NCBI GenBank assembly: GCA_013416795.1
Contig: RQSC01000314.1
Span: 6,097-70,096, forward strand
From: Prasinococcaceae sp. CCMP 1430
Taxonomy: Eukaryota; Plantae; Prasinodermophyta
DNA: 64,000 nucleotides
Reading direction: 5' to 3'
Shown here in pieces: positions 9,670 through 48,673 of this stretch (within the stretch, counting starts at the first letter, position 1; each line of letters opens with the position of its first letter). The notes under the pieces are model-generated. The model made no database searches. It saw only the letters and a program-made list of their open reading frames with translations, and was not told the DNA's origin. The position numbers and the translations under genes were made by a program.

Positions 9670-11187
9670 ATGGGCGGGTGCCTGAGCGCGCGCCCAGCGG
9701 ATGCGCGGCCGGCGGTGCACGACTTCGTCGCCGCGCGGGCGCAGGCTGCTGACGACGGGGCGGGCGGGCACGCTCCGAAAAGACGAGGGGGCGACGCGCG
9801 CGCAGGCCAGTCCAGGAAGGGAGGAGGGGGGGCGCCTTCCTCCTCCTCGGCCAAAAGTACCCGGGCGCAGACGGCTGCTCGAGGGTCGCCAGTTGCCACG
9901 GCTGCACGCGCCGTGAGCTCGTTTCTCACGTCGCGTCCCGCCCCGCCCTCAGAACCCATCGTCCGCCCGCTTGCCGAAGCACGTGCGGCGAGGAGGCTCG
10001 CCGCGGCTGCGGGGGTGCGCGTCGATCAGAGGCTCAGCGGTGACACTGATGCGGCGCGCGCGCGTGGTGACGGCAGGGCCGAAGAGGTCGTAGCGCACGG
10101 TTCTTATGAAGGGCCAGTCGATGATGGCTTGTGCACTGCCACCACTCCTACGCGTGCGCCACCAAACGACTCTGGCACCGACCTGCGGGGCGTGCGCAGG
10201 AATCCTCCGGAGCTTAGTGCGAGCGTGCTCAGGATCATAGATGTCGTTCTCGGACCACCCGTCAGCACCGTCACCCCGGCGCAGGCCGCATGGAGCACCA
10301 CTGCCCTGTCGTCGCCCGCGCCAGCGGACCACACTGTGACGCAGGTCCTACCATTGGCACAGGCGCGTGTGAATGGCGACTCTCCGGACTCGGACGGCCT
10401 GGCCACGAGCGAGGTTGCAAACGGCGTGGCAAATGGCACCGCGAGCGGCGGCGCGCAGGTGCCGCCGCTCCTCGCGCTGCCGCCGCCGTCATTTCTCGCA
10501 GCATCGTCGGCGAAGGTGTTTGCAGAGCGGCGCTCGCTCGCTGTGCGGCTCACGCGGGCAAGCTCGCTCAAGGCCTTTCGCAACTCGAAGGTGGCCAACC
10601 CGCGCGCGGCATCGCGGTATGAGTCGGAGTACGCGCGTAGCGACAGCACCGCTGGCCTGGCCGAGGCCGTCGAGCTCGAGACGCGCTCCATGGCAGAGGG
10701 CAAGCAGCTCATCGACGCGCGTCTCGCGAGGCTCGGCCTTTCGTCGGTCTTGATGATGGATGACGGCAACTGCCAGTTCAGAGCACTGAGTCACCAATTG
10801 TTCGGCGATCAGAGCTTCCACAAGGAGGTTCGAGCGGAGGTCGTCGCATGGATGAAAACACACGCGGCCAGCTTCGCCCCATTCGTTGGTGGCCGGAGCG
10901 ATTTCTACCGATACGTCGCGGACATGGGGAAGAACCGCTGCTGGGGCGACGAGCTGACCCTGAGAGCCGCGTGCGACGCCTTCCGATGCGTCCTGTTCAT
11001 CGTGCAGTCCACCAAAACCAATTGGCTTCTTGTGTACGAGCCCGGCCGGAACGCCCGGCGCTCGCGCGCCGAGGACAGGGACGCGCACCGCAAGACGGTC
11101 TTCCTTTCCTACATCGCCCCCGTGCACTACAACTCGGTCCTGCTGCCGCCCGGCTACGGCCAGAAGGGGGGGCGTGCGGCCGGCTGA
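9670..11187 (+). CDS. OTU-domain deubiquitinase with N-terminal MGGCLS acylation motif
   Basis: DDGNCQFRALSHQL catalytic Cys motif, WGDELTL, VHYNSV His motif. Confidence 0.9.
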   Translation: MGGCLSARPADARPAVHDFVAARAQAADDGAGGHAPKRRGGDARAGQSRKGGGGAPSSSSAKSTRAQTAARGSPVATAARAVSSFLTSRPAPPSEPIVRPLAEARAARRLAAAAGVRVDQRLSGDTDAARARGDGRAEEVVAHGSYEGPVDDGLCTATTPTRAPPNDSGTDLRGVRRNPPELSASVLRIIDVVLGPPVSTVTPAQAAWSTTALSSPAPADHTVTQVLPLAQARVNGDSPDSDGLATSEVANGVANGTASGGAQVPPLLALPPPSFLAASSAKVFAERRSLAVRLTRASSLKAFRNSKVANPRAASRYESEYARSDSTAGLAEAVELETRSMAEGKQLIDARLARLGLSSVLMMDDGNCQFRALSHQLFGDQSFHKEVRAEVVAWMKTHAASFAPFVGGRSDFYRYVADMGKNRCWGDELTLRAACDAFRCVLFIVQSTKTNWLLVYEPGRNARRSRAEDRDAHRKTVFLSYIAPVHYNSVLLPPGYGQKGGRAAG

Positions 11188-11458
11188 CGCGCGCCAGGAA
11201 GGGAGGGTCTGGACGGACACATGTCAACGACGCACCTTAACCCAACCACCGCGAGCCACGAGCCGCTCGAAAAGTTCGCTCGCACGCTCGCGCTCGCAGG
11301 GAGTACCACCTCCGCGTCCGCGCCGTCGCCAACGCCCACCTCACCGGCGTCCGCGCCGCTCGCACCGAGGCCCGGGCCGAGCGCACGACGGCGGGCGCTG
11401 GCGGCTGACGGGAGGCCCGGGGAGGAGGGGGCTGAGGACCCGGAATCAGAAATGATTA

Positions 11459-11476
11459 TTAGGGTTTAGGGTTTAG
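11459..11476. promoter_or_regulatory. Telo-box (TTTAGGG) pair upstream of the myosin
   Basis: ttagggtttagggtttag. The same motif occurs at 2833, 8178, 8221, 40717, 40819 and 48694. Confidence 0.6.
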
Positions 11477-11726
11477 TATCGATGGCGTTGCAGTTGCATG
11501 GCATGGCATGGCATGGCACGGCGCCCCAACCCCCGGAACACACACACAGGCACAGGTGGCAATGGGCCAATGGCGTTTGATGGGGCTCGCGCGCGCGCGC
11601 GCGCGCGCGGGCGCCCTGCTACGGCGGGAAGCGCCGCACTCGTAACAGCCACAGCGCCAACAGCCCCACGCATCCCCCCCCCCCCCTCCCCCCCCCTAGC
11701 GGGGGCGGGGCGAGCGGGGGCGCGGC

Positions 11727-14700
11727 ATGGCGCCGCCCAGGGATGGGCCGCCGTCGCTGCTGCGCCTGGACGCGATGGACACGCCCAGCGTGCTCGAGTG
11801 CCTCCGCGCGCGGTCCGAGCGCGGCGAGGTGTACACCTCGGCCGGCGACGACATGCTCGTGAGCGTCAACCCGTTCAAGGCGACCGCCGCGTGCAGCGAC
11901 GCGGCGCTCGACGCGGCGGTGAGCGCGGCGGTGGGCCGCGGCGGAGGGGGGGATGACGGGCCGCCCTCGGCGTTCTCGATAGGCTCGCGCTGCTGGACGC
12001 GCCTGCTGGCGACGCATCGCTCGCAGGCGGTGGTCATCTCGGGCGAGAGCGGCGCGGGAAAGACAGAGTGCGCCAAGATGGTGTTCCGCGCCCTCGTGGG
12101 CCTGTCCGAGCACAGCTCCAAGCACCCGCGCGCCTCACTCACCGCGGGCGACGGCCAGTCGAGCCAGCGCCCATCGGCGCGCGTGTCGACCACGCACACC
12201 TCGAACATCGAGGCGCGCCTGCTGGTGGGTGGCCTCGCCCTGGAGGCGTTCGGCAACGCGCGCACCGTGCGCAACGACAATTCGAGCCGCTTCGGCAAGT
12301 ACCTGTCCTGCGCGGTCGATCGCAAGGGTCGCCTGGCGGGCGCGCGCATCATCACCTACCTCCTCGAGCGCAGCCGCGTGGTCTCGCAGGCGCCACGGGA
12401 GGCGCCCTTCCACGTCATGGGTGCGCTCGCCGGAGCGGGCTACGGCTCGCACCTGGCGGCGGGCTCCGCGCGCGCGTACGTGCGCGAGGCGCCGCCCGCG
12501 TCCGAGGCGGGCCGCCTGCTGCGCCAGATTACCGATCGGCTGTCCGCCGCCGGCGTGAGCAAGGCAGGCGTGAACAGCATCATGAGCGCTGCCGCGGCTG
12601 TGCTGTGCCTGGGCGAAGTCTCCTTTGAAGATGCTGGCAACGAAGGCTGCACCGTGAATGCCGGCGAGTCAGCCAGGAAGCTCGCAGCGGCCGCGGCGCT
12701 GTTGGGCAAGCCCGACGGACAGATCGCCGAGCTGCTCACGGAGCGGCTGCTGCCGCTGCCGGGTGCGGAGCGCGTGACGGTCAAGCTCTCCGCCGACGCG
12801 GCCGCCCAAGCGCGCGACGCCACTGCCAAAGCGCTGTACGCACGTGTTTTCGAGGTGCTAGTCATGGAGCTCAACGCGGGCCTGGCAGCTGGCAGCGGCA
12901 GGACCGACGCCACGTCCGTCAGCGTGCTAGACATCTTCGGATTCGAGAATTTTGCGTCCAACAGCCTCGAGCAACTGCTCATCAACTATGCGAACGGTGC
13001 GTGTGTCGGTCCGTGGCGAGTCCTGGCGCAAGGCAGGCGCGATGCCGTCGCTGACAACCGTTTGCGCGCCCGACTCGCACTGTCGCTCTCTGCCCCCGCA
13101 CGCTCACCCGCGCCAACCAGAAAAATTGCAGGGCCTGTGCACCAGCATGTTGCTCGCAGCCGAGCAAGCCGAGTACGTTGAGGAGGGCGTGCCATGGACG
13201 CCGATCGAGTTCGTGGACAACGAGGCCACTCTCGCAGCGTTTGAGCGGCGCGCAGGGCTGCTTGGCATGCTGCACGAAGAGGCCACGCTGCAGCAAGGTG
13301 GGGACGCGACGCTGCACGGCAAGCTCAAGGCCGCCCTGAACGACGACGCGTGCTTTTCGATGCCCTCCGCAGCCGGTGCGCGCGGCCAGTTCGTCGTCAA
13401 GCACTTTACCGGCGATGCGGTGGTGTACGATACGCAAGGCATGGTGGAGAAGGCGCGCCAGACACTGCCGCCTGACCTCGAGGCCCTGCTTGACGATGTG
13501 CTTCCACTTCAGCGCGAGGACGCGCCCACGGGTGGCAGCGCGGCGAGCGGCGGTGGGGGTATTCGCGCATCGAAGCGCGGCAGCGCCACCGGGCGCAAGG
13601 GCAATCGCCGCGTCGGGTCGACAGTGCTGCAATTCAAGGCGCAGCTCGCCTCGCTTCACTCGGCGCTCGCAGCGTCGCAGCTCAGCTTCGTGCGATGCGT
13701 GAAGCCAAACGCCGCCAACAAGCCAGATTGCTTCGACGATGAGTACTGCAAGCCACAGGTGCTGGCCGCAGGGGCCGCAGAGCTCGCGCGCATTCGCTCC
13801 GCCGGCTGGGCGGTACGCCTGCCAGCCAAAGACCTCGCCGAGAAGTTCAGCTGCGTGTTGGGCGAAGGCGCACCCGAGGACGACAACATCGCGCTCGCAA
13901 ATGCGGACGTGGGTGGGGCAAGACAGGCCGCCGAGGCCGTTCTCAGAGCCGGCGGCGTTCCCGCTGAGCAGTGGTGTTTCGGGAAGGCCACCGCGCGTGT
14001 GTTTGTGCGTGACGAGTCGGCCATGGAAGGGCTCTGGGCGATGCGCAGGGCGGAGATGGAACGCCGTGCCGAGGCCGCGCGCAAGGCGCGAGAGGAGGCG
14101 GAACGCCTCGAACGCGAGCGGCAGAGGCAGATGACAGCCGAGGCTGAGGCGGCGGCCGCGGCCGCGGCGGCACAGGCGGCGGCTGCAGCGGCACGCGCAC
14201 CTAGCGCGGAGGAGCTGGACCTTCCCGTGCACCTGCGCGACCTCCTTGCATCCGGGGTGCTGTCGCTCCCAAGCAGCAGGGCGGGCGGCGTGCGGCGCAC
14301 AGCGTCGATGGAGGATTTGGTGGTCGACTCGCAAGCGATTGACCTGGACGAGGCCCTCGTGGCAGCACTGGCTTTCGAGGAGCAGCAGGCGGCAGCCGCG
14401 CACGCGCAGATGCTGCTGGACGACGAGGCACTTGCTCTGCGGCTGCAGGAGGAGGAAGATCGCGCGGCAAGGGAGCACGAGCGTGCGCAAGCAATGGCAG
14501 TGAATGGCGGCGCGAGTGAGGCTGATCAGATGCTGTGGGCCATGCAAGAGAGCGCCCGGATGGCAGGTCGCGCCGGCGATGCCGTCGACGAGCGTGGGAC
14601 CGACGCAGTTGGGCCGGATGGCATAGCACTCGAGCACGCCGGCAGCACGCAACCCTCCACGCCGCCGCGTTCGCCCGCGCACGCGTACAGCCAGAGTCCA

Positions 14701-14907
14701 TACTCGTCGCCGCAGGCGCACCAGCAGCTGTTGGCGGGGCGCGGCACGAGCGCGGATGGCAGTCCCGCTGCGGGCACGTGGGTGCCGCCGTCGGGAGGAC
14801 AAACCGCCTCCGTTCACTCGTCCTCGGCGAGCTCGGTGGTCGGTGCCAGCCGTGGTGGCGATGTGACGTCGGCGGAGAGCAAACCTGGATGCTGCGTCAT
14901 ATCCTGA
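11727..14907 (+). CDS. Unconventional myosin; exons 11727-12996 and 13121-14907
   Basis: LVSVNPFK, P-loop GESGAGKT, switch I NDNSSRFGKY, switch II DIFGFE. Removing intron 12997-13120 restores NYANEKLQ. FVRCVKPN; ends CCVIS*. Confidence 0.92.
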
Positions 14908-15156: not shown

Positions 15157-17765
15157 TCAGATGTACGCGGGCTCGTCGGTGGCCAGCTCGTGTGAATTGT
15201 GCGGCACAGCCTCGAGCACGACGCAAGAGTGCTTGAGCACGCGCACATGTCCGAACTCGGCGATCGCCTCTCGCCTGGCGCCGACGAGCGGGACCCCGGC
15301 GTTCATGAAGTCATCCTGCAGCAAATCACTGCGCAAGAAGTCGAATGGAGCCTCCGCGCCGGTGTCGGCAACGACATCCCACCTGCGGATGGCGTTCGCG
15401 AGCGTGTCAGCAACGCATTCGAGCGGCGGCCCCGCCACGCTCCACCCTGATCGCGCTCGCGCCCGCTGGCTGCTGGCGGCTCGCAGCGCGTACCTCATGC
15501 CACCACCCAAGTGGGGGAGCTCCAGCGTCCTCGCCACGCCGCCCGCGTTAAACGCTACATATACGTCGCCGCCGCCCTCCTCGAAGAGCCTGAAAGCGCA
15601 GAGCTCCGACGTATCCTCCCAGTCGGGCTGGCCGGCGAAATCTCCATGCCACTCAATTTGATCGTGGCCGGGGAAGTTGCGGCCGCGCAGGCACGCCTTG
15701 CTCTTGCGGAAGGCGACCATCCCCGCCGTGAATCGCAGCATGGCGCGCGCGTCATTGCCACGCGAACCCGCCGAGACGAGCACGTCCCACGGCAGGTAGT
15801 TGACGTCCGTATCCCAGCAGTACGTGTTGTTGTTACCGCCTTTCGTGTGGTTGATCTCGTCACCCATGTTTATCATGGGAGTGCCATGCGCAAGGAGCAG
15901 GGCCGCCATGAGGTTCCGACGGTTGCGCGCGCGCATGCGACGGACCTCGACGTTCTTCGTCGGACCCTCCTCACCACAGTTCCAGCTGAGGTTGTGTTCC
16001 TCACCGTCGCGGTTGTTCTCGCCGTTCGCCATGTTGTGGCGCTGCGCGCGGGCGCGATGCGGCGCGGCGCGTCAGCCGGGCACGCACCGGGGTCAGCCGC
16101 GGCCGCTGTCGCCGCGTCACGCGAGCGCGCTCGTGTGGCGACAGCGCGCGCGCGCGCAGCACGCACCTCGTTGAATGCCGTCAGGTCGGCCGTTGTGAAC
16201 CCGTCGTGACACGTCACGAAGTTGAGGCTCGCTTTTGGCCCCCTGTCCCCGGGGTACAGGTCGGGCGAGCCGCACATGCGTTTGGCGAAATCGCTGATGG
16301 CGCCGCCGCCGCCCGGCAGCAGCAGGAAGCGCCTGACGTCGTCGCGGAATTTGCCGTTCCACTCGGCCCAGCGCTGGCCGCAGGGGAAGCTGCCGACCTG
16401 ATAGAGCCCGCCGGCGTCCCAGGGCTCGGCGAAGAGTTTGACGTGAGCCAACGCCGGGTCGCGCGAGATCGCCTCCACAAGCGGGGGCGCACCGAGGGGC
16501 GTGCCGGTGTACACGCCTCCGCCGTACTCAGCTGCCGCGGCGGGCCTGCCGTCGCCGTCGCCCCCGTGGCCGGAGTGGCCGCCGGTGACGACCGAGCCGT
16601 AGGCGCTCTCGCCGTCCCACCTGGTGCTGGAGCGCGTGAGAATGGACGCGAGGTCGAAGCGGAAGCCGTCCACGCGGCACTCTATTGCCCAGAAGCGCAG
16701 GCAGTCCAGCACAAACTGCCGCGCGAGTGGGGTGTTGCAGTTGAAGGTGTTGCCGCAGCCACTGTAGTTGTAGTGCTCGCCGGCGGGCGCCATCACGTAG
16801 TAGGAGCGCTCGTCGAGCCCACGGAAGGTGACGGAGGGACCCATCTCGTTGCCCTCGGCGGTGTGGTTGAACACCACGTCCAGGATGACCTCAATGCCCA
16901 AGCGGTGGCACTCGCGCACCATCTCCTGCATCTCGCGCAGGGCGGTCAAGGCGCCGTCCCCGGAGCTGTAGCGCGCCATGGGCGCAAAGAACGACAGCGT
17001 CGAGTAGCCCCAGAAGTTGAGGCGCGTGGTGCCGTTGTCGAGCAGCTTGTAGTGCTCCACCTCGTTGAATTCGTAAATGGGCAGCAGCTCCAGTGCGTTC
17101 ACGCCCAGGAACGCCAGGTGTGGCAGGGCGTCCTTGACTGCCGCGTACGTGCCCGCCTTGGCATCGCCCTCCTCAGTCTGCCGCAGCGCGGTCAGCCCGC
17201 GCACGTGCGCCTCGTACACCACCAGGTCCTCGCGCGCGTGGCGCGGCGGTCGCGTGCCCTCCCAGTCGAACTCGGGCAGCTCCACCGTCGCCGCGCCCAC
17301 CGGTAACACGCCAGCCATCTGCGGCCACAGGCCGCCCTCCGCTTCAGACGCCACGTCGCCAAACTCGGGCCGCGCGGCCGTGCCCACACCCGGCGCGCGC
17401 GGGTCGACGAGCACGGGGGGCGGGCCGGGCGGGGCGGGCGGCGCGGCGGGCGGCCTGGGGCCGTCGGGCTCCGTCACCCGCCAGCCGTAGTAGCTGTAGT
17501 TTCCCTTCTTCAGCATGTCCGCAGTCAGGCGGCAGTGCCACACGTCGCCGGTGCGATGCTCCTCAGGGGATAGCTCGTGCTCCGCGGACGGCTTGGCATT
17601 GCCGCGCCCGCCGATGAGCGCGTCCTCGCTCCAGAGCACGATCGAGACGCCCCTCGAGGGCGTCGCCACCGCGAGGTTGACGCCGCCGTCAGGCAGCGCC
17701 GTCGCGCCGAGCGGCGCGGGCGCGCCCGCGAGCGTGGACCCGCCCCTGCCCAGCAGCGCGCCCAA
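15157..17765 (-). CDS. ISA1: Isoamylase-type starch debranching enzyme (GH13, ISA1-like); introns ~16161-16045 and ~15495-15380; N-terminus unresolved
   Basis: FNHTAEGNE, YNYSGCGNTFNCN, DGFRFDLASIL, AEPWDAGGLYQVG, NFVTCHDGF, NLSWNCGEEG. The insert after RFDLAS (TRSS..W..TGTP) is ISA1-like. Confidence 0.88.
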
Positions 17766-30255: not shown

Positions 30256-33200
30256 CTACAACGCCATCGCGCTCGCCTGTTTGTTGAGGTCGAAGCCATG
30301 CGCGATCTGCACGTGCACGTTGACACATGCCAGGCATGCGGCGGCGTGCGAGAGGAGCGCGCCTGCACCCGCGACCGCCTCTGCGGCACCCCGCGCGGCG
30401 GAGGGATCGCCTCCCTCCGCGGCCATAGCAATTGCCTCGGCGCGCGCACGATGCTCGGCCGCTCTTAGTGCGTCTCTTGTTCCCTCGCCCATCGAGTGAA
30501 GCATCGCGATCACCTTCTGCCCGTTGTGCACCAACGCCCAAAGCGCCGAAGCGGCGTGCGCGCGCGCCGCGGCGGTGTACGCCCCTCCGGTGCGGTCCCC
30601 AGCAACCTGGATGAGCACGCGCAAGGGGCCACCGCCACTGCTGACGAAGTGTGCCTTGGCCTCGGATACGAACGCGCAGTTTCGCAGGAGGGCAACGGCG
30701 GCAGCGGCAGCACGCCGCGATGCCGCGCCTTTACCGCCCTCAGCGGGCGCCCGCGCGGCCACACACGCCAGCTGCACGAGACCGCAGAGCTTGGGCCCGC
30801 GCAGCACTGCGCTCGCGCCGTCGGCGTGCGCAGCGATTGCCGCCAACGTGAGCAGTGCCTGTTCTGCGAGACGGACCGCCGAGGCTGTGCCGACGACGAC
30901 GCCTCCCTGCCTTTTCTTCCCCGAGGACTTCACAGACGCAGGCTTGCGCGTCGCCAGCGCCACGTCTGTCGACGACGGGTATGCTTCGCCAATGATGCGG
31001 CCGCACGCGGCCAGCACGACGCTCTTCGGAGACCCGAGCACAGCCCTCGTCTCCGATCCGGCTGCGGCGCAGTGGGCGGCTCGCAACGAGGCTTTGATGA
31101 GAGCTGCCGGCGACTTGACGTCTGCGGCCGGGCCCACAGCCAGGCCCAGCGCACCGTTGTTATTGCCGGCCGCTAGCGCCCGCCGCGCGCCGCTGCCGCC
31201 GCTCGCAGCCACGTTCGCAACGAGCGCGATGAGCTCGAGTCGGAGGGCACCCCCGTCAGAAGTGCCCGATGCACAAGCTGCGGCGGAGCGCGCCACAGGC
31301 CACAGGGAGACAACGACCCTGGCGGCCCCTGCCGCAGCGGCGGCATCGGCGCCCCGCCTCGAGCCGAGCGCGAGGTGGCGCAGCAGGGACGTTGCACGCG
31401 TCGCACCAGCGAGCAGCTGGGCCCTGCGGTTCGCGCCAGCACCTACGCCGCCGCTGAGCGTCCAGGCCTCCCGCGCGGCCAGTGCCTGCGCCGCCAGCGC
31501 CGTGTGCAGACCGGCATCAATTGTGGCTCCCTTGGCCGCACCCGAGTGCGCGATCAGGCTGCGCAGACAACTCAGCGCCGCCGCGCCCGTCGGCGACTCC
31601 TCGCCAGCACTGTTGACGATCGTGAGCAGGTCCATCGCCAGCTGTGCACCGTGCCTGTCCCCCTTCCCGAGGGCAGCTGCAGCCTCCGCCGGCGTCGCGA
31701 GCAGTGCTGCGGCGCCGCGGCAGACAGATGCGACAATTTCGGCGTTCGAAGTCACCGAGGGTGCCTTGAGGAGACGTGACACGCCAGCCAGGGCAGCCGA
31801 CGCAAGCTGGCGCCCATCGGGGCCCTGCCACCACGGGGCGCTCTTGTCCCCTGTGAGCATGGCCAAGGCAGAAGAGGCGCTGGCCGCCGCCGCCGCGCGC
31901 TCCGCCTCTGCAGCCGGATCCTGCGCCAGGCCGCCTGCGGCGGCGAGCGCAGCGAGCACGCCAGCAGCGACGAGCGCCCCGCCGCATGCACGCAGTACCT
32001 GTCGGTGGGACTCGCTGCGGGCGGCCGCGATGCACATGAGCTCGCAGACCGCCGAGATTGCGCCGCACGCGTCCGCTGCGTGCGGGCCAGGGAACGCCAC
32101 GTGCGCGAGGAGAGCTCCGGCATCCTCGTCGCCTTCTTCTGCGGCACTCGGCACACTCAAGGCCCGGAGGAGCACGGGCCACGTCTGATCCGCAGCAGGC
32201 AGTGGGCCACATGCAGCCTCGTCCAAGGTGTCAGTGGCGAGGACCGCGCGTGCGAGGGCCTCGCATGCGCCCCGGAGCACGCAGGGGGCCTGCGCACTGC
32301 GCTCGTTGGTGGCTGCCGCGGCGACCTCCCACAGCTGCAAACTGCGGGCGAGGCCAGCGGCGAGGTCGTGCGGCCGCCGCCCAGGCAGCTCCTCGGGGTC
32401 CTCGACGCCAGCGGCAGCTCTTTGCTCGAGCATCGCCGTGACGCACCGCAACGCCGCGCCCCTGACGGCGGCGCACTCGCGCACGTCGAGCGACGCCAGC
32501 AAGGCGCACTGACCCGCCTCGAGCCAGGATCGCTCGACGAGCGCCCTGGACGCGTCGCAGCTTGCAAGGGCTGCCAACAGCGCGTGCGAGGTGCAGCGCG
32601 CGGGCGCCCACGGATCGCGACACGCGCGACTCAGCCAGTACGTGCCACCCGAAGCTGCAATGGACTGCGCCCACACGTCCTTCGAGCACGTTGATGCTAT
32701 CGTCAGAAGGGCGTCGAGAGAGCTGTGCACGGCGCCTCGTCCGCGCAGGCCCACAGGTCTCTCGCGACGCTCCACAGCGACGCAGGTCACAAGGCTCGCA
32801 GAACTTTTGGCAACAACATCCATGGCGTCGATAGACCCGGCGGCAGCTGCCACCGGCGCGAGGGCACAAATGAAGCGAATGGCGAGCACTCGCAGGCCGT
32901 AGCGCGCAGCGTCTTGCTTCGTGCGCCACTCAGTCGAGTCACGCCATGGAATGATAGAGTCCACCAGCATCTCGAGCAGGGAACGAGATTCGGGGTTGTC
33001 CGAGGTGCACACCGTTGCAGCCAGCGCGCTTGCCTCGCGCGAGGTGCCCCTCGCAGCAACCACGCCAGAAAGAGCCGCCAGCACGCGCATGCACTGCTGC
33101 GTCACAACCACCAAAGAGCTCGGCACGCCGGTCGCGGCATCCAGGCTCGCGCTGTCCTGCTTCACCAGGGCATGGCAACATGCGTCCACTATCGGACAGA

Positions 33201-36200
33201 ACGCGGCCCGCACAGCCGACGTAAGCATTGCCACAAAGCCGGTCGGGATATCGCCAGGAGGGGCCGCAACAAGGAGCTGCTCGGCGAGCGCGAGGACCTC
33301 AATCAGCAGCGCGCGGTCCGCTGATGTCGCGGGCACGACCGAGAGAAAGCGTGCCAGCGCCTCGCCCGCACCCGCAGCCAGCCAGCCCGAGGCCCCTTCG
33401 CACGATGAGCAGGTGTCGCGCGCAATTGCGATCTGTGCCATCGCCTCCGAGTGGCCAGCGGCGCGCCCGAGGGCCTCCTTGAAGGCCCTCGGAGCAACGT
33501 CGACATGGAGCGCGCTGATGATGGACACGTCGAGCGAGGACATACTGCCCACGGCGCCGTCAACCGCGGTATCGCGCGCGCTCTGCAGCGATTCGAGCGC
33601 CTCGCGCGCGCTGCCCGAGAAGAGCACGAGCGACGCCACCAGCTCACGTGCGGCATCGAAGTCCGCAGATCCTGAAGTGGCGCCGGCGTCGCCTGTCACC
33701 TTCACTTCACATGGGAGTTTGTAGGCGTCAGCAAATGGTCCAGGGAGTGCGATCATATGAGCAGGCACGCCGTCCGGCACCAGCGAATCGGCGCCTGCGA
33801 GGCCGAGGGCACGCGGATCGAAGACGATGTAGGCGATCGCCGCCGCCGCCGCCCGACGCACAGCCATAGATGCGTGGAACACGAGGGGCACGAGCTGCAG
33901 GAGCCGGCCGTCGTGTGCCAACCACTGACGCGCGACGCTAGAGGCACCCACGGCCGACGCGAGCAGTCCCGCAGCCGAGGCCCGAGCTGCGCCGCCCCAG
34001 CTCTCGCCCGAGCTGCACTCTCGCAGCAAGGGTTCAAGCAGTGTGTCATCGGACAGAATGGGCTCGAGACGGGGGTCGTGCGAGAGAGCGATGAGCTGCT
34101 CCGCTGCGGCCGCCCTGACATTGCCTCCGATGTTGAGGTTGCCGGCGACGCGCGCCAAGTCAGGCGCGTTAGCGCAGCTCCCGCTCGCACGGGAGCGGTA
34201 CACCGTGCCAGGCATACCGTACGGGCGATCGGGTTCGTAGCCAGCAGCGAGCGCCGCGCCCAGCGGATCCGCAACGACGTCGCTCAGGTTGGCAGCCTCC
34301 GCGAGCGTCACAGCGCGCGCCGCAGCACCGCGCCACTCCACCTCAGCATCTGCGGCGGCGTCCTTGGCGCTCGCGCCCCCCTGGGCCACGTCGATGACGG
34401 TAGCGGCGGCTCGCGCACGGCACGCCGAATCCACGCTGAAAAGCGCGCGCAGGGCAGGCGCAAGCTGGGCAAGGTCGTTCCTGGCGGCGCTGGACCCGTA
34501 AAAGGGTGCATCCATGGCGGCTCCCTCGATGAGCGCGGAAAGCGAGCCCATCGCACTGCCGGCCGCGGAGGCCGCGGCAGATCCAGCGCGCGCCGCACAC
34601 GCGATCCACGGCGCACGGTCTACAATGCCGGCCCTACCCTCGGCAGTGCCCTGCGCAGCAGCGAGCAGGCACCGCGCGGCGTTCGCAGCGACATCCTCGA
34701 CCTCGCAGTGCAACGCACTGCACGCTAGCGCGTCTAGTAGCTGCGGGGAGGGCAGCATGAGGACCGCGGAAGCGATAGGCCTCTCCCCGCCCGTTGCTGC
34801 ACTCGCGGCCACCTCCGCCTCGACCTTGGCCGCGAGGACACCGAGAGCAGCCGCGCGCACCTCGTTTGATTTGTGAGACACGAGGCTCGCTGTCGCGCCG
34901 GCAGCCTCGAGAGCCGCACCCGAGCCCAGCGCGGCAGCCTGAATCAGCAGGGCCTGGGTCCTAAGTGCCGCCTCGGCCGGTTTCGGCGCTGCTCCGAGCG
35001 TCGGAACGGCCCGGGCGATGGCCTCGAGTGCGGCAGGCACGTCGACCTTCGCATCACTGCCGATGTCTGCCACCTCGCCCAGGTGTGCGGCGGCGTCCTC
35101 GAGGCTCTCAAGCGCCGCGGCAGCCTCAGATGCCAGGGCGAAAGCCGCCGCGGCAGCTGGGTCTGCAGCAGCAGCGTACGGCCTGAGTCTCGCAGCCAGC
35201 TTCGGCCGGCTCATCTGCATGGCGCCGGTGAAGGACGCGCGGGCGATGCGCCCCGCCAGCGGAGCCGGAACAGTGACGGCCGCAACCTCGGGCTCCAACA
35301 GCTCCAAGAACGCGGCAGCCACAGACAGGACGCGCGTCAGCGCCCTGGCGATGGCGTCAGTACCGCCAGCATCCACGTCTCTCTCGGCGACCTCGGCAGC
35401 GCTGGAGAGGGCCTCGAAGTACCCCTTGAAGCGCGCGCTGGCTTGCAGCACAAGCTTGCCTCGGGCATCACCCTTCGTGATGATGTCCTCATCTTTGACG
35501 CCAAGGAGCGGCACAGCAACTGCGAGTAGCGGGAGCAGCTCCTGGTTGCGAGTTGCCGTGTGAAGCGCGCCGAGCGCGTGATGCGCGACGATGTGCGCCG
35601 CTTCAGAGACGTCCACCCACTCGCCGTCGGACCCAACCATTCCCAGCGGAGGCGTAGGGTACGAGCGCGGGAAGTCAACCGTACCCGGTGTGTGCCGCGA
35701 CTCACCTGCCTCGGTGCTGGGTGCTGGCGCAGCAGGGAGCGACACGTCGAAAGATCCGTCCTGGGCCAGCGCGAGAGCGCGGGCTGCCGACCTCAGCACG
35801 GCGGCCAGCGCGGTGGCGGCCAGCGCTGGCAAGCCCGAGCCTGAGGTCGCATGCAGGCACGCCGACACGTTGCGCACCAGCGCTTTGCGGGCCAACACGG
35901 CCCCCGCCATGCAGTCCACAGAAGCGCGATCCTTGAGCTCCGTGAGCACACGAAGCGCCACGTCCGCATCTGCGGCGTGCTCAAGGCGCAAGTTGATTTC
36001 GAACAACGCCTGTGCGTCCTCGGGAGCCACGGGAGGTGCGCGCAGGCACAGACCCCAAGGAACGCCCCCGTCGCCTGTGCCGCTGACGCCAGCGCGCGCT
36101 TCGGCCGCTGCGGCGCGGCCGCGGGCGTACTCGGCTCGCTCGGCCTCGCCGAACAGACCTGCCGCCGCGAGCGCTGCGCCGTCGCCGGGGTGCGGCAGCG

Positions 36201-37252
36201 GGGACACATTGGCGGTGCCGGCCGCCTCCACCTGCGCGTCATCGCCCCCAGCCACCTCGCCATCGTCCGGCGCGACGCTGGGGGGCGTTGCCGAGTCGGG
36301 CGCGGCGCCGCCGCGCAGGTCGTCCGCCAGGGGCACTTCGCTCGCTGGCGGCGACCCGCACACGGGCGCGCGCATCATTGCCTCCTGCAGCGCGTCGAGC
36401 TCCATGGGGAGCGCAGGGACCTCGTCTCTGAGGTCTTCCCACACCGCCGCGAAGAACTCCACCGCGCCAAGCTCGGCCAGCCTGGCCTTGCACGCCTCGT
36501 CCGCTGCGAGCGACGTGAGCAGCTGTGCGACGTCGCAGTGGCGCGTGCAGTCGGCGAAGTTGTACCACTCCATGAGCGCCTCGAGGAAGCCCGTGCACGC
36601 GACGGCGTCGGCCGGAGTGGCGAGCCCGCTGTCGAGCTTGAACGCCGCGCTGTCCAGCGCGCGGCAGCGCACCTCCCGCAGGCGGTGCCCGAGCTTCTGC
36701 GCGAGCGCCGCCGGCAGCGCGCCCGTCTAGTCGAATACTTGCATATTTGCCTTCTTTAGCAACTACTTGCGCTGATGTTCCTGCAGCTCGTACTAATTTA
36801 GCTCCTTGTGTCGGCGCTAATTCAATATTATGAATTTCTGAACCTACTGGAATTGCTGTTAAAGGTAATGCGTTTCCTGTTTTTAAAGGTGCTATCGGAC
36901 TTGATTCAATTACTTGACCTAATTCTAACCCTTGTGGAGCTAAAATATAGTGTTGTTGTTCGCTGGTTTCAATTTTTGCAAGAAATGCGTTACGGTTTGG
37001 ATCATATTCTAATCCCATAACTTTTCCTGGATTATTTTGAGCGAAACGTTTCCATAAAACAAAACGGTAACGTCGTTTATGCCCACCACCGCGATGTCGA
37101 GCTGTAATTCGTCCTTGGTTATTGCGACCTTTTGAACGTTGGAAGCCCTTAATATTAGCACTTTTTTTAGTTTGTGCTGTATTTGGGAATCTAACTACCC
37201 CCCCCCCACACACCGCACGCACGCGCGCGCGCGCGCGTGCGCGCCCCGCCAT
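30256..37252 (-). CDS. RTTN: Rotatin (centriole/basal-body ARM-repeat protein); main exon 36726-30256, putative exon 1 37252-37223
   Basis: N-terminus KLGHRLREVRCRALDSAAFKLDSGL..LMEWYNF..LGAVEFF matches the rotatin N domain from recall. About 2150 aa of helical repeats; C-terminal LWALVHNGQKV. Confidence 0.85.
36727..37197 (-). pseudogene. rpl2: Organellar (probably plastid) rpl2 fragment inserted in nuclear DNA (NUPT), or a chimeric join
   Basis: Abrupt AT-rich block translating without stops to GRNNQGRITARHRGGGHKR..YDPNRNA..GNALPL..IHNIEL..LVRAAGTSAQVVAKEG, with A/T-ending codons. Confidence 0.92.
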
Positions 37253-48340: not shown

Positions 48341-48673
48341 CGAAGCAGCCACGACGCCCTCCGCAACCTCCTCCCCGCCCCGCCCACCTGCCCCGCCAGC
48401 AGCGCCGCACCCGCGGCGCCACGCGCGCGAAAAACTCGCCCCCGAATTGGATTCCATCACCCATGCAATCACACATTCAATACTCACAAGGATTCCAAAC
48501 TAATCCTATTCTGGCGCGGTATCACATTGAATCCCCTGGGCGCGCGCGGCGCTCGCGCCCGCTCGCGCGCGATATGTGGGTTCCTTATTCGTTCCATTTC
48601 ATAAAAATGCATTCAATTGGTTTATGGATTCCACAATAGAAGGATTTTGTTGCGGTATCGCGGTTGAATCCGC

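What the first reader, a model, noticed from the sequence alone, without database searches (positions are those of the whole stretch)
11727..14907. Myosin with no IQ motifs, an SAH lever, MIU/UIM-like motifs and a CaaX box (myosin VI-like tail in an alga)
Seen: a minimal motor with intact P-loop and switches. Straight after the converter comes an ER/K helix (RRAEMERRAEAARKAREEAERLERERQRQ, ~14041-14130), with no IQ motif visible. Then DDEALALRLQEEEDR (14419-14463), EADQMLWAMQESARMA (~14518-14565) and a C-terminal CCVIS* (14890-14907). Known: green-plant myosins are mainly classes VIII/XI, with IQ repeats and coiled-coil/DIL tails. Animal myosin VI has SAH followed by MIU. DxxLAxxLQxEE is the Rabex-5-type MIU pattern, and CaaX ending in S predicts farnesylation, with adjacent-Cys palmitoylation. 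Inference: a monomeric, membrane-tethered motor for ubiquitinated cargo, possibly an orphan myosin class convergent on myosin VI.
Basis: partly seen in the sequence, partly recalled or inferred. Interest (0 to 1): 0.8.

Follow-up and report, generated by a model that had tools for sequence, protein, structure and literature searches.

The report
Orphan algal myosin with ubiquitin-motif, lipid-anchor tail
This is a real, expressed but very divergent myosin motor gene of the tiny green alga Prasinoderma coloniale; its tail carries conserved ubiquitin-binding-type motifs and a Ras-like lipid-anchor signal, a combination not described for myosins, and its function is only predicted.

Summary
Window 11727-14907 (+) is a two-exon gene (intron 12997-13120) for a 1018-aa myosin, identical to the uncharacterised Prasinoderma coloniale protein A0A7R9TJM5 / PRCOL_00006341.

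- **Motor:** the ATPase motifs are intact, and AlphaFold folds the motor confidently.
- **Lever:** a 60-residue unbroken helix follows the converter directly. There is no canonical IQ, only a degenerate IQ-like start and a 29-residue Glu/Arg-rich stretch.
- **Tail:** one helix carries a Val-variant MIU-like motif and a canonical MIU (D..LA..LQ). A UIM-like helix, about 110 disordered residues and a C-terminal CCVIS follow.
- **Conservation:** these motifs are 59-94% conserved in the only orthologue (63% identical overall), while the linkers are 11-25%.
- **Relatives:** an exhaustive search of 1.8 billion proteins found no other relative above 39% identity. Nothing else shares the tail.
- **Phylogeny:** the motor sits on a stem of about 2.3-2.6 substitutions per site, outside every labelled class. 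Nesting in class XI is rejected. A very derived class VIII-like origin cannot be excluded.
- **Myosin VI:** it is not a myosin VI, because it has no reverse-gear insert.

Ubiquitin binding, prenylation and the monomeric state are inferences. It is a new variant of a known kind, of moderate interest.

The parts
11727..12996 (+). Exon 1 (aa 1-423 plus the first base of codon 424). It holds the N-terminal half of the motor. There is no SH3-like Myosin_N domain.
   Evidence: ORF and splice donor G|GTGCGT. Pfam Myosin_head 2.2e-77. The start Met is matched by the MMETSP transcript orthologue P0270.
12997..13120 (+). Single spliceosomal intron, 124 nt, GT..AG, phase 1, inside the conserved INYAN|EKLQ motif.
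   Evidence: The junction is confirmed by the intronless orthologue L001/P0002 and by identity to P0255.
13121..14907 (+). Exon 2 (aa 424-1018 plus the stop). It holds the C-terminal half of the motor, the lever helix and the tail.
   Evidence: Pfam Myosin_head profile positions 393-679, E 3.5e-37.
12042..12065 (+). P-loop GESGAGKT (aa 106-113).
   Evidence: The column is invariant in the 56-myosin alignment.
12273..12299 (+). Switch I NDNSSRFGK (aa 183-191).
12930..12947 (+). Switch II DIFGFE (aa 402-407).
14014..14196 (+). Continuous 60-61-residue helix (aa 722-782) that leaves the converter directly. It is the presumed lever or lever extension.
   Evidence: AlphaFold helix 722-781/782 in two independent runs, pLDDT 90-96 over about 730-770. 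It is 88% identical to the orthologue over 721-760.
14032..14064 (+). Degenerate IQ-like string LWAMRRAEMER (aa 728-738) at the position of a first IQ motif.
   Evidence: It matches only a loose pattern, [FILVM]x4[RK][GA]x3[RK], which also matches once inside the motor. No Pfam IQ hit. The string is identical in the orthologue.
14044..14130 (+). Glu/Arg-rich SAH-like segment (aa 732-760, 29 residues).
   Evidence: 66% E/R/K, 9 i/i+4 and 8 i/i+3 opposite-charge pairs, and only 2 bulky hydrophobic residues. It lies inside the high-confidence helix.
14131..14199 (+). Ala-rich continuation of the helix (aa 761-783; 17 of 23 residues are Ala).
14212..14271 (+). Conserved tail island ELDLPVHLRDLLASGVLSLP (aa 788-807), function unknown, containing a short helix at 793-800.
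   Evidence: 77% identity against 19% in the following linker.
14344..14502 (+). Long tail helix (aa 832-884) that carries both MIU-type motifs.
   Evidence: AlphaFold helix 832-884/885, pLDDT 83-94. Residues 829-871 are 87-94% identical to the orthologue, the most conserved part of the protein.
14347..14373 (+). MIU-like motif 1, DEALVAALA (aa 833-841). Val stands at the position of the critical Ala, and Ala at the position of Gln.
   Evidence: It matches only the loose pattern. It is 94% conserved.
14422..14448 (+). Canonical MIU core DEALALRLQ (aa 858-866), i.e. D-x-x-L-A-x-x-L-Q.
   Evidence: Same spacing as the ubiquitin-contacting D446, L449, A450, L453 and Q454 of RNF168 MIU2 (PMC5766498). 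0 hits in 334 kaa of other myosins; shuffle p 0.0013; same aligned position in the orthologue.
14518..14562 (+). UIM-like helix (aa 890-904). The core is MLWAMQES (894-901: hydrophobic-x-x-A-x-x-x-S), preceded by SEADQ.
   Evidence: The core is kept in the orthologue as MAWALRES. Specificity is weak (13% of shuffles), and there is no Pfam UIM hit.
14563..14889 (+). Disordered Ser/Pro/Ala/Gly-rich linker (aa 905-1013). It contains one conserved island, G-x-WVPPS..ASVHS, at 14773-14832.
   Evidence: pLDDT below 50. 22-25% identity apart from the island, which is 70% identical.
14890..14907 (+). C-terminal CCVIS plus the stop. CaaX box is C1015-V-I-S, with an adjacent upstream Cys1014.
   Evidence: The orthologue has CCTIS. 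All environmental variants read keep CC-x-I-S, one of them as CCDIS.

Best explanation
The locus encodes a lineage-restricted, fast-evolved unconventional myosin of Prasinoderma (an orphan by motor phylogeny).

Shown:
- The gene is intact, spliced and transcript-supported.
- The motor has a complete ATPase signature and a confidently predicted myosin fold.
- The converter runs without any insert into one 60-residue helix that lacks a canonical IQ.
- The tail is two further helices plus about 110 disordered residues, ending in CCVIS.
- The lever, the MIU-bearing helix, the UIM-like helix and the CCaaX end are conservation islands.

Inferred mechanism:
- The motor is an ordinary, non-reversed (plus-end-directed) actin motor. 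An acidic residue (E348) at the TEDS position suggests it needs no heavy-chain phosphorylation.
- The ER-rich and poly-Ala helix acts as a largely light-chain-independent lever or spacer of about 9 nm.
- Cys1015 is farnesylated (X = Ser, as in H-Ras CVLS). After -VIS removal and methylation, Cys1014 is palmitoylated, which fixes the tail in a membrane.
- The flexible linker holds the MIU-like, MIU and UIM motifs near that membrane. There they bind ubiquitin on membrane proteins or adaptors with low affinity but multivalently.
- The protein would thereby couple a ubiquitin-marked membrane or cargo to actin for sorting, endocytic or organelle movement. Alternatively, ubiquitin binding gates the motor.
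For: - **Gene model and expression:**
- **Motor integrity:** Pfam, catalytic motifs, AlphaFold pLDDT above 90 over most of aa 17-780 with pTM 0.72, Foldseek TM 0.77-0.86 to solved myosin motors.
- **No insert, and a lever helix from residue 722:**
- **No IQ:**, with a positive control.
- **ER-rich statistics:**
- **MIU:** the pattern equals the RNF168 MIU2 contact residues (PMC5766498). The central Ala is critical in RNF168 (PMC2699339) and in myosin VI (A1013G, PMC10290672). It has 0 background hits and shuffle p 0.0013.
- **Conservation islands:** lever 88%, MIU-like 94%, MIU 87%, UIM 59% and CCaaX 88%, against 11-25% in the linkers.
- **CaaX conservation:** kept across two species and more than 20 environmental variants.
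- **Independent CCaaX-ended myosins exist**, which suggests that lipid anchoring of a myosin heavy chain is a used solution.
Against: - No Pfam UIM or IQ model fires, and there is no dedicated MIU model, so the motif calls rest on short patterns. I fixed the strict MIU pattern after seeing the sequence.
- The UIM core is non-specific (13% of shuffles).
- MIU-like motif 1 has Val where Ala is critical.
- The tail is Ala/Leu/Glu-rich, a composition that favours such matches.
- The very high positional identity of the lever (88%) is more than a passive SAH spacer needs, and hints at a bound partner such as a light chain.
- The motor has lost 22 of 125 near-universal myosin columns, more than any of 54 comparison myosins, so normal motility is not assured.
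- One environmental variant ends in CCDIS.
- Nothing here tests prenylation, ubiquitin binding, oligomeric state or direction.
Confidence: 0.45

Rival explanations
1. It is a highly derived paralogue of the green-lineage motor-plus-IQ myosins (class VIII-like) that lost its IQ motifs and gained a new tail. The MIU/UIM-like strings are not ubiquitin binders. They are an amphipathic adaptor-binding, dimerisation or autoinhibitory helix that happens to fit short consensus patterns.
For: - AU tests do not reject grouping with, or inside, the clade of Mesostigma, Chlamydomonas and an environmental alga (p=0.245 and 0.158).
- The nearest rows by path length are Archaeplastida myosins: Mesostigma, Cyanophora and class XI.
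- No profile model supports UIM.
- The whole 829-871 helix is conserved, including the stretch between the motifs (90%), as expected for one extended binding or packing surface.
Against: - The free trees exclude the protein from that clade, with 98/99 support for the clade without it.
- Non-rejection is weak evidence here, because an unrelated grouping is also not rejected (p=0.375).
- The strict MIU contact pattern is absent from 334 kaa of other myosins.
- There is no regular heptad seam in 832-884.
Confidence: 0.3
2. The protein is mainly a static or slow membrane-actin tether, or a tension sensor, rather than a transport motor. The divergent motor binds actin, and the lipid anchor fixes it to the cortex.
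For: - It keeps only 82% of near-universal myosin columns, against at least 90% in 54 other myosins. That includes loss of columns that are invariant in the other 54 (Y56C, H81S, F430C, A520T).
- Its Pfam motor score is about 390 bits in two pieces, against 730-830 bits for ordinary myosins.
- The tail is short, with a constitutive anchor signal.
Against: - The P-loop, switch I, switch II and an acidic TEDS residue are all intact (and direct reading).
- All the deviations are shared by both species, so they are under selection rather than decaying.
- A long conserved lever helix is hard to explain for a pure tether.
Confidence: 0.15
3. It is an annotation or assembly artefact, or a pseudogene. 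On this view the tail or the CaaX does not belong to the mature protein.
For: There is one intron, and prokaryote-style gene callers split the gene into 484-aa and 586-aa fragments in metagenomes. One metatranscriptome variant of the orthologue lacks about 38 residues around MIU-like motif 1.
Against: - The spliced model is identical to the 1018-aa database protein, which is listed for two entries.
- The orthologue is one uninterrupted ORF in genomic contigs and in an MMETSP transcript that includes the tail and CCTIS.
- Conservation is island-like, as expected under purifying selection.
Confidence: 0.03

Closest known systems
Animal myosin VI (SAH lever extension, MIU and MyUb ubiquitin-binding motifs, cargo-binding domain)
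   Same: It is an unconventional myosin with a charged single-helix-type segment in the neck or proximal tail, and an MIU-type motif with the same D-x-x-L-A-x-x-L-Q logic. The critical Ala is known from myosin VI A1013G (PMC10290672).
   Different: - There is no insert 2 (reverse gear): the lever helix starts 2-3 residues after the last converter strand.
- There is no IQ, MyUb or CBD.
- Class VI is among the least similar solved motors, about 213-215 bits against 289 for myosin X.
- Membrane attachment is predicted to be a covalent lipid anchor rather than adaptor or PIP2 binding.

Any resemblance is convergent and limited to the tail.
Green-lineage myosins VIII and XI
   Same: The host lineage is the same. 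Viridiplantae are reported to have only classes VIII and XI (PMC3942036). The nearest sequences by tree path are Mesostigma, class XI and Cyanophora myosins.
   Different: - There is no DIL domain, no IQ repeats and no coiled coil.
- Identity to them is about 30-34%.
- The stem is 2.3-2.6 substitutions per site.
- Class XI membership is rejected. Class VIII-like ancestry is unresolved.
MIU and UIM helical ubiquitin-binding motifs (Rabex-5, RNF168, myosin VI; tandem UIMs or MIUs such as RAP80 and MINDY-1)
   Same: It has the contact-residue pattern and an isolated-helix context. There are two MIU-type motifs 25 residues apart on one continuous helix, followed by a UIM-like helix. This is the layout used elsewhere for avidity or chain-type selectivity (PMC5766498).
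   Different: Motif 1 has Val in place of the critical Ala. There is no profile-model support, and no binding data.
H-Ras/N-Ras-type CaaX plus adjacent Cys membrane anchor
   Same: The extreme C-terminus is C-aliphatic-aliphatic-Ser (CVIS, against H-Ras CVLS from my own knowledge) with an upstream Cys and no polybasic stretch.
   Different: It is attached to a 110-kDa motor heavy chain. I found no paper describing a natural prenylated myosin heavy chain (a phrase search only).
SAH levers of myosin X, VIIa and VI
   Same: It is a charged, hydrophobic-poor helix with dense i/i+4 ion pairs.
   Different: It is only 29 residues, Arg-based (10 R, 1 K), comes directly after the converter instead of after IQ motifs, and is continued by poly-Ala.
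Environmental short myosins P0011, P0034 and P0062, which end in GGGGCC-a-a-X
   Same: They are short (814-862 aa), lack IQ motifs and have a CCaaX C-terminus.
   Different: Their motors sit in the class I clade (98/100 support). Their tails are unrelated and have no MIU, UIM or ER-rich helix. A common origin is not supported by the free tree, although the AU test does not reject it (p=0.375).

Membership tests
Myosin superfamily | Myosin_head motor domain (PF00063) above the curated cut-off | tested here: met
   261 and 128 bits in the two exon pieces, against a cut-off of 33.3.
Myosin superfamily | Intact P-loop, switch I and switch II | tested here: met
   GESGAGKT, NDNSSRFGK and DIFGFE are present. 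These columns are invariant in the 56-myosin alignment.
Myosin superfamily | Myosin motor fold | tested here: met
   AlphaFold pTM 0.72, motor pLDDT above 90. Foldseek TM (normalised to target) 0.77-0.86 to solved motors.
Myosin class XI | IQ repeats, coiled coil and a DIL globular tail | tested here: not met
   No IQ or DIL hit. DIL and IQ are found in class XI controls.
Myosin class XI | Motor groups with the class XI clade | tested here: not met
   AU p=0.018 as sister or member, and p=0.00024 nested among chlorophyte class XI.
Myosin class VIII | Neck with IQ motifs | tested here: not met
   No Pfam IQ. There is only a degenerate IQ-like string at 728-738.
Myosin class VIII | Motor groups with class VIII | tested here: inconclusive
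   The Mesostigma/Chlamydomonas motor-plus-IQ clade is class VIII-like by architecture, but its class was not verified. It excludes the query in the free trees (98/99 support). The AU test does not reject union with it or nesting in it (p=0.245 and 0.158). No confirmed land-plant class VIII sequence was in the set.
Myosin class VI | Insert 2 (reverse gear) between the converter and the lever | tested here: not met
   The last converter strand is at 716-719 and the lever helix starts at 722 with no insert.
Myosin class VI | MyUb and C-terminal cargo-binding domain | tested here: not met
   No Pfam domain in the tail. No homologue of the tail was found.
Myosin class VI | Motor closest to class VI | tested here: not met
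   Among solved structures, myosin X scores 289 bits, VIIa 266, I about 250, II about 240, V about 234 and VI about 213-215. No class VI sequence was in the trees.
MIU (motif interacting with ubiquitin) | Helix with D-x-x-L-A-x-x-L-Q contact residues, including the critical Asp and Ala | tested here: met
   aa 858-866 DEALALRLQ, and the same in the orthologue. It lies in a helix with pLDDT 83-94. The contact residues are taken from PMC5766498. Motif 1 (833-841) fails at the Ala position, where it has Val.
MIU (motif interacting with ubiquitin) | Binds ubiquitin through the Ile44 patch | not testable with these tools
   No complex prediction or binding assay was available.
UIM | Acidic run followed by hydrophobic-x-x-Ala-x-x-x-Ser on a short helix | tested here: inconclusive
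   The pattern is present at 890-901 and kept in the orthologue, in a helix at 890-904. However, it arises in 13% of shuffled tails, and the Pfam UIM model gives no hit at E<=10.
SAH (stable single alpha-helix) | E/K/R-rich helix with dense i/i+4 ion pairs and no hydrophobic seam | tested here: inconclusive
   aa 732-760: 66% E/R/K, 9 i/i+4 pairs, 2 hydrophobic residues, and a high-confidence helix. It is short, and no dedicated SAH predictor or monomer test was available.
CaaX prenylation substrates | Cys at position -4, aliphatic a2, X = S/M/A/Q at the true C-terminus | tested here: met
   CVIS followed by the stop. The orthologue has CTIS, and the end is conserved in the variants.
CaaX prenylation substrates | Is actually farnesylated and palmitoylated | not testable with these tools
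   This needs a biochemical assay. The presence of farnesyltransferase in this genome was not checked.

The most novel reading that the evidence does not exclude
Prasinoderma, a member of the deepest-branching phylum of green plants, carries a third, previously unrecognised kind of green-lineage myosin. It would be a light-chain-poor, single-helix-lever motor that is covalently lipid-anchored to a membrane and reads ubiquitin through a tandem MIU/UIM module. That would be the first natural prenylated myosin heavy chain, and an invention of a ubiquitin-receptor myosin independent of animal myosin VI. Together with the unrelated environmental CCaaX-ended myosins, it would define lipid-anchored myosins as an overlooked design.
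Probability: 0.3. Interest if true: 0.7.

Novelty: new variant of a known kind. Interest (0 to 1): 0.55.

Why it matters
Green plants and algae are generally described as having only class VIII and XI myosins, with no plant-specific tail domains (PMC3942036). This protein is a clear exception in a phylum that branches at the base of Viridiplantae. If the predictions hold, there are three consequences. Coupling of ubiquitin recognition to an actin motor, so far described for animal myosin VI, would have arisen independently. A myosin heavy chain could be membrane-targeted by Ras-type lipidation rather than by adaptors or lipid-binding domains. A motor could work with a lever that lacks canonical light-chain sites. 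Each prediction can be tested directly with small constructs. Tempering this, orphan myosins are common in protists: 287 remained unclassified in one survey (PMC5583752). The family is confined to two close lineages, and every functional claim rests on short motifs.

Tried and rejected
- **Pfam scans of isolated neck and tail peptides for IQ and UIM (E<=10):** no hits.
- **Word-based homologue search with exon 2:** swamped by poly-Ala words, only 2 hits.
- **Tail-only search:** nothing beyond the two Prasinoderma-type proteins.
- **PDB sequence search with the MIU/UIM region:** it hit designed TPR repeats at 7.6e-05. This is one query segment matched five times to a repeat protein (each match i-E 17-30), in a stretch that is 11% conserved between the orthologues. 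I rejected it as repeat-inflated.
- **AU tests on the 74-row tree:** did not finish in the time allowed. I repeated them on a 31-row set.
- **Synteny of the upstream OTU protease gene:** the orthologous contigs are too short to judge, and tblastn found nothing.
- **Population variants for a selection test:** only 2-4 synonymous and 2 non-synonymous differences, which is uninformative.
- **Organism of the GC-rich class VIII-like myosin P0006 and of the CCaaX environmental myosins:** not recoverable.
- **Literature:** no paper links Prasinoderma with this myosin. None was found by phrases for prenylated, farnesylated or palmitoylated myosin. The two myosin classification papers do not mention UIM or CaaX.
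- **Foldseek of the full model:** matches all myosin classes about equally, so it is no help for class assignment.
Full report
**1. What is in the sequence**

The region lies in about 69% G+C eukaryotic DNA. Two overlapping forward ORFs (11727-13181 and 12952-14907) are joined by one GT..AG intron at 12997-13120. The intron splits the universally conserved INYAN|EKLQ motif.

The spliced product is 1018 aa. It is identical, residue for residue, to a database protein of Prasinoderma coloniale: UniRef100_A0A7R9TJM5, 'Myosin motor domain-containing protein', EukProt PRCOL_00006341-RA. So the window comes from P. coloniale, and the gene is already annotated but uncharacterised.

An orthologue from a related organism exists as P0002 (949 aa) and P0270 (991 aa). 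It is 63% identical overall and 68-69% in the motor.
- It occurs in Tara Oceans contigs, in JGI samples and in an MMETSP transcript.
- It is intronless, it reads straight across my splice junction, and it has the same convergent isoamylase neighbour.
- The transcript contains the same start Met and the whole tail with its CCTIS end.

**2. The motor**

Pfam Myosin_head covers aa 12-720. The P-loop, switch I and switch II are canonical. The residue 16 positions before the DALAK-type motif (DATAK, 364-368) is Glu348. That is an acidic TEDS residue by direct reading, with the rule taken from my own knowledge.

AlphaFold2, run with a 56-myosin alignment, gives pTM 0.72 and pLDDT above 90 over most of the motor. 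Only loop 1 (136-158) and loop 2 (560-578) are disordered. Foldseek matches solved motors of classes X, V, I, II, XI and VI about equally, with TM normalised to target of 0.77-0.86.

The motor is nevertheless unusually divergent.
- Its Pfam score is about 390 bits summed over two pieces, against 730-830 bits for ordinary green-lineage myosins.
- It keeps only 103 of 125 columns that are at least 85% conserved in 54 other myosins. That is 82%, while the lowest comparator keeps 90%.
- It has lost columns that are invariant in the other 54 (Y56C, H81S, F430C, A520T). Every deviating position also deviates in the orthologue, with the same residue at nearly all of them, so this is selection and not decay.
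- There is no N-terminal SH3-like domain.

**3. How isolated it is**

I ran an exhaustive HMMER search of 1.84 billion cluster representatives with the orthologue. It returned 16,066 myosins, but only fragments of these two Prasinoderma-type genes scored high. Every other protein is at most 39% identical and at most 315 bits. The word-indexed search gave the same picture, with a mixed bag of class I, VII, XI, oomycete and pelagophyte myosins at 30-35% identity. Against solved structures the order is myosin X > VIIa > I > II > XI/V > VI.

**4. Phylogeny**

I built a 74-row quick tree and a 31-row careful tree under LG+C20+F+G4 PMSF. Both put the pair on a stem of 2.3-2.6 substitutions per site. 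The stem attaches to the unresolved backbone, outside the class I (TH1), class VII (MyTH4), class XI (DIL), oomycete and pelagophyte clades.

| Grouping tested by AU | p |
|---|---|
| With the class XI DIL clade | 0.018 |
| Nested among chlorophyte class XI | 0.00024 |
| With the Viridiplantae motor-plus-IQ clade | 0.245 |
| Inside that motor-plus-IQ clade | 0.158 |
| With the environmental CCaaX myosins (control) | 0.375 |

The motor-plus-IQ clade contains Mesostigma viride, two Chlamydomonas species and an environmental alga. It is class VIII-like by architecture, but I could not verify its class.

The control grouping costs only 3.95 log-likelihood units, even though the free tree puts those myosins in class I with 98/100 support. 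The branch can therefore be moved cheaply, and non-rejection says little. Composition is also biased, which the tree tool flags.

My conclusion is that it is an orphan by any operational definition and not a class XI. A very derived class VIII-like ancestry remains open.

**5. Neck**

In two independent AlphaFold runs the last converter strand (716-719) is followed at residue 722 by one unbroken helix to 781/782. pLDDT is 90-96 over about 730-770. There is no insert comparable to the myosin VI reverse gear.
- No Pfam IQ hit is obtained, even on the isolated peptide at E<=10. IQ motifs in neighbouring green myosins score 1e-5 to 1e-11 in the same library.
- The first 11 residues, LWAMRRAEMER (728-738), fit a loose IQ skeleton (L, R6, A7, R11). 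They lack the Gln, the Gly and the distal hydrophobic residue, and the loose pattern also matches once inside the motor.
- Residues 732-760 are 66% E/R/K (10 Arg, 1 Lys). They have 9 i/i+4 and 8 i/i+3 opposite-charge pairs and only two bulky hydrophobic residues. That is SAH-like but short, at about 4.3 nm.
- Residues 761-783 are 17/23 Ala.
- The segment 721-760 is 88% identical between the orthologues, more than the motor at 58-79%. That is more positional constraint than a passive spacer needs, so a bound partner such as an unconventional light chain cannot be excluded.

**6. Tail**

AlphaFold predicts a short helix at 793-800, a 53-residue helix at 832-884 (pLDDT 83-94), a helix at 890-904, and disorder to the C-terminus. 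No Pfam domain is found. A search restricted to the tail finds no homologue other than the two Prasinoderma-type proteins.

Identity to the orthologue is strongly island-like.

| Segment | Identity to orthologue |
|---|---|
| Motif at 788-807 | 77% |
| Following linker | 19% |
| 829-846 (MIU-like 1) | 94% |
| 847-856 | 90% |
| 857-871 (MIU 2) | 87% |
| Linker | 11% |
| UIM region | 59% |
| Disordered part | 22% |
| Island at 975-994 | 70% |
| Last eight residues | 88% |

- **MIU 2.** It reads D858-E-A-L861-A862-L-R-L865-Q866. This is exactly the spacing of the ubiquitin-contacting D446, L449, A450, L453 and Q454 of RNF168 MIU2, where D446A abolishes binding (PMC5766498). The Ala is the residue whose mutation to Gly kills binding in RNF168 (PMC2699339) and in myosin VI (A1013G; PMC10290672). 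The strict pattern D..LA..LQ occurs at the same aligned position in the orthologue. It never occurs in 334,000 residues of 250 other myosins, and it occurs in 0.13% of composition-preserving shuffles of the tail. I fixed this pattern after seeing the motif, which weakens the statistic.
- **MIU-like 1.** It reads D833-E-A-L-V837-A-A-L-A841, with Val at the Ala position, so it is not canonical. The two centres are 25 residues apart on the same predicted helix. That is about 3.7 nm and roughly the same face, by my arithmetic and not by any test.
- **UIM-like.** The helix has the hydrophobic-x-x-Ala-x-x-x-Ser core (MLWAMQES; MAWALRES in the orthologue) after an acidic run. This pattern arises in 13% of shuffles and has no Pfam support. 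It rests mostly on conservation.
- **Variant.** A metatranscriptome variant of the orthologue (P0281) lacks about 38 residues and retains a single canonical MIU. Whether it is an isoform, an allele or an assembly collapse is unknown. At the DNA level the two motifs share only an 11-nt repeat 75 nt apart.

**7. C-terminus**

The protein ends in C1014-C1015-V-I-S followed by the stop.
- By the established CaaX rules, X = Ser directs farnesyltransferase and an adjacent upstream Cys is a typical palmitoylation site. This is the H-Ras CVLS type, from my own knowledge. There is no polybasic stretch.
- The orthologue ends in CCTIS. All 586-aa environmental variants of the P. coloniale type end in CCVIS, except the cluster representative, which ends in CCDIS.
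All three end in a Gly run followed by CC-a-a-X. They are a separate family of short, IQ-less environmental myosins whose motors sit in class I.
- I found no paper describing a prenylated, farnesylated or palmitoylated myosin heavy chain. That was a phrase search in an incomplete library.

**8. Interpretation**

Shown: a real, expressed, selectively maintained, extremely divergent myosin with a motor, a single long helix, a helix bearing MIU-type motifs, a UIM-like helix, a disordered linker and a CCaaX end.

Inferred:
- The motor moves in the ordinary plus-end direction, because there is no reverse-gear insert.
- The lever is largely light-chain-independent.
- Farnesyl and palmitoyl groups anchor the tail in a membrane.
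- The tail binds ubiquitin multivalently but weakly, close to that membrane. It would link ubiquitin-marked membrane proteins or adaptors to actin, or it would gate the motor.

None of the defining class VI features is present.

The main rival is that the conserved helix at 829-871 is some other binding or packing surface on a derived class VIII-type paralogue. A second rival is that the divergent motor acts mainly as a tether.

**9. Known or new**

The protein is in public databases without functional annotation. No paper found here discusses it. [quoted passage not shown] On the other hand, orphan myosins are frequent in protists: 287 were left unclassified in PMC5583752. I rate it as a new variant of a known kind, and of moderate interest because every predicted property can be tested cheaply.

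Noticed in passing
P0011, P0034, P0062 (environmental proteins): Three short (814-862 aa), IQ-less environmental myosins end in a Gly run followed by CC-a-a-X (GGGGCCVVS, GGGGCCLIS, GGGGCCVVQ). Their motors fall in the class I clade (98/100 support) and their tails are unrelated to the Prasinoderma tail. Lipid-anchor signals on myosin heavy chains therefore occur in at least two lineages, and I found no paper describing them. The source organisms are unknown.
   Followed up: partly
window 9670-11187 (+): The gene directly upstream, on the same strand and 540 bp away, encodes a 505-aa protein with an OTU cysteine-protease (deubiquitinase-type) domain (Pfam 6.4e-14). It is a ubiquitin-pathway neighbour of a myosin with ubiquitin-binding-type motifs. 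The orthologous contigs are too short to show whether the adjacency is conserved.
   Followed up: partly
window 46205-48487 (-): An ORF here carries VHS and GAT domains (TOM1/GGA-like ubiquitin-receptor architecture; Pfam 7.4e-25 and 3e-16), about 31 kb from the myosin. It is probably unrelated.
   Followed up: no
window 11458-11475 (+): A plant-type telomere-like repeat, ATTAGGGTTTAGGGTTTAG, lies about 250 nt upstream of the myosin start codon. It is the only such site in the window and none is expected by chance. It could be a telo-box-like promoter element or an interstitial telomeric remnant. A (GC)n run and a long C tract follow at about 11588-11697.
   Followed up: partly
P0281 (metatranscriptome variant of the orthologue); corresponds to about window 14310-14425: This variant lacks about 38 residues that span MIU-like motif 1 and the inter-motif stretch, which leaves one canonical MIU. 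It could be an isoform, an allele or an assembly collapse between the two DEAL-type repeats.
   Followed up: partly
window 15157-17765 (-); L001 3469-5823: An isoamylase-type starch-debranching enzyme gene lies convergent to the myosin. In the window it is split over at least two ORFs, so it probably also contains an intron. The arrangement is conserved in the orthologous contigs.
   Followed up: no
L003 (P0006, 1323 aa): A conventional class VIII-like myosin from marine metagenomes sits on DNA of 68.8% G+C, the same as the Prasinoderma-type loci. It may be the ordinary myosin of the same or a related alga, which would make the window's gene an extra paralogue. The organism could not be established.
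   Followed up: partly
window 30259-36672 (-) and 58146-60698 (-): There is a large ORF with a Rotatin N-terminal (centriole-associated) domain, in an alga described as non-flagellate. There is also an alpha-amylase with an N-terminal Agenet domain, which is an unusual fusion.
   Followed up: no
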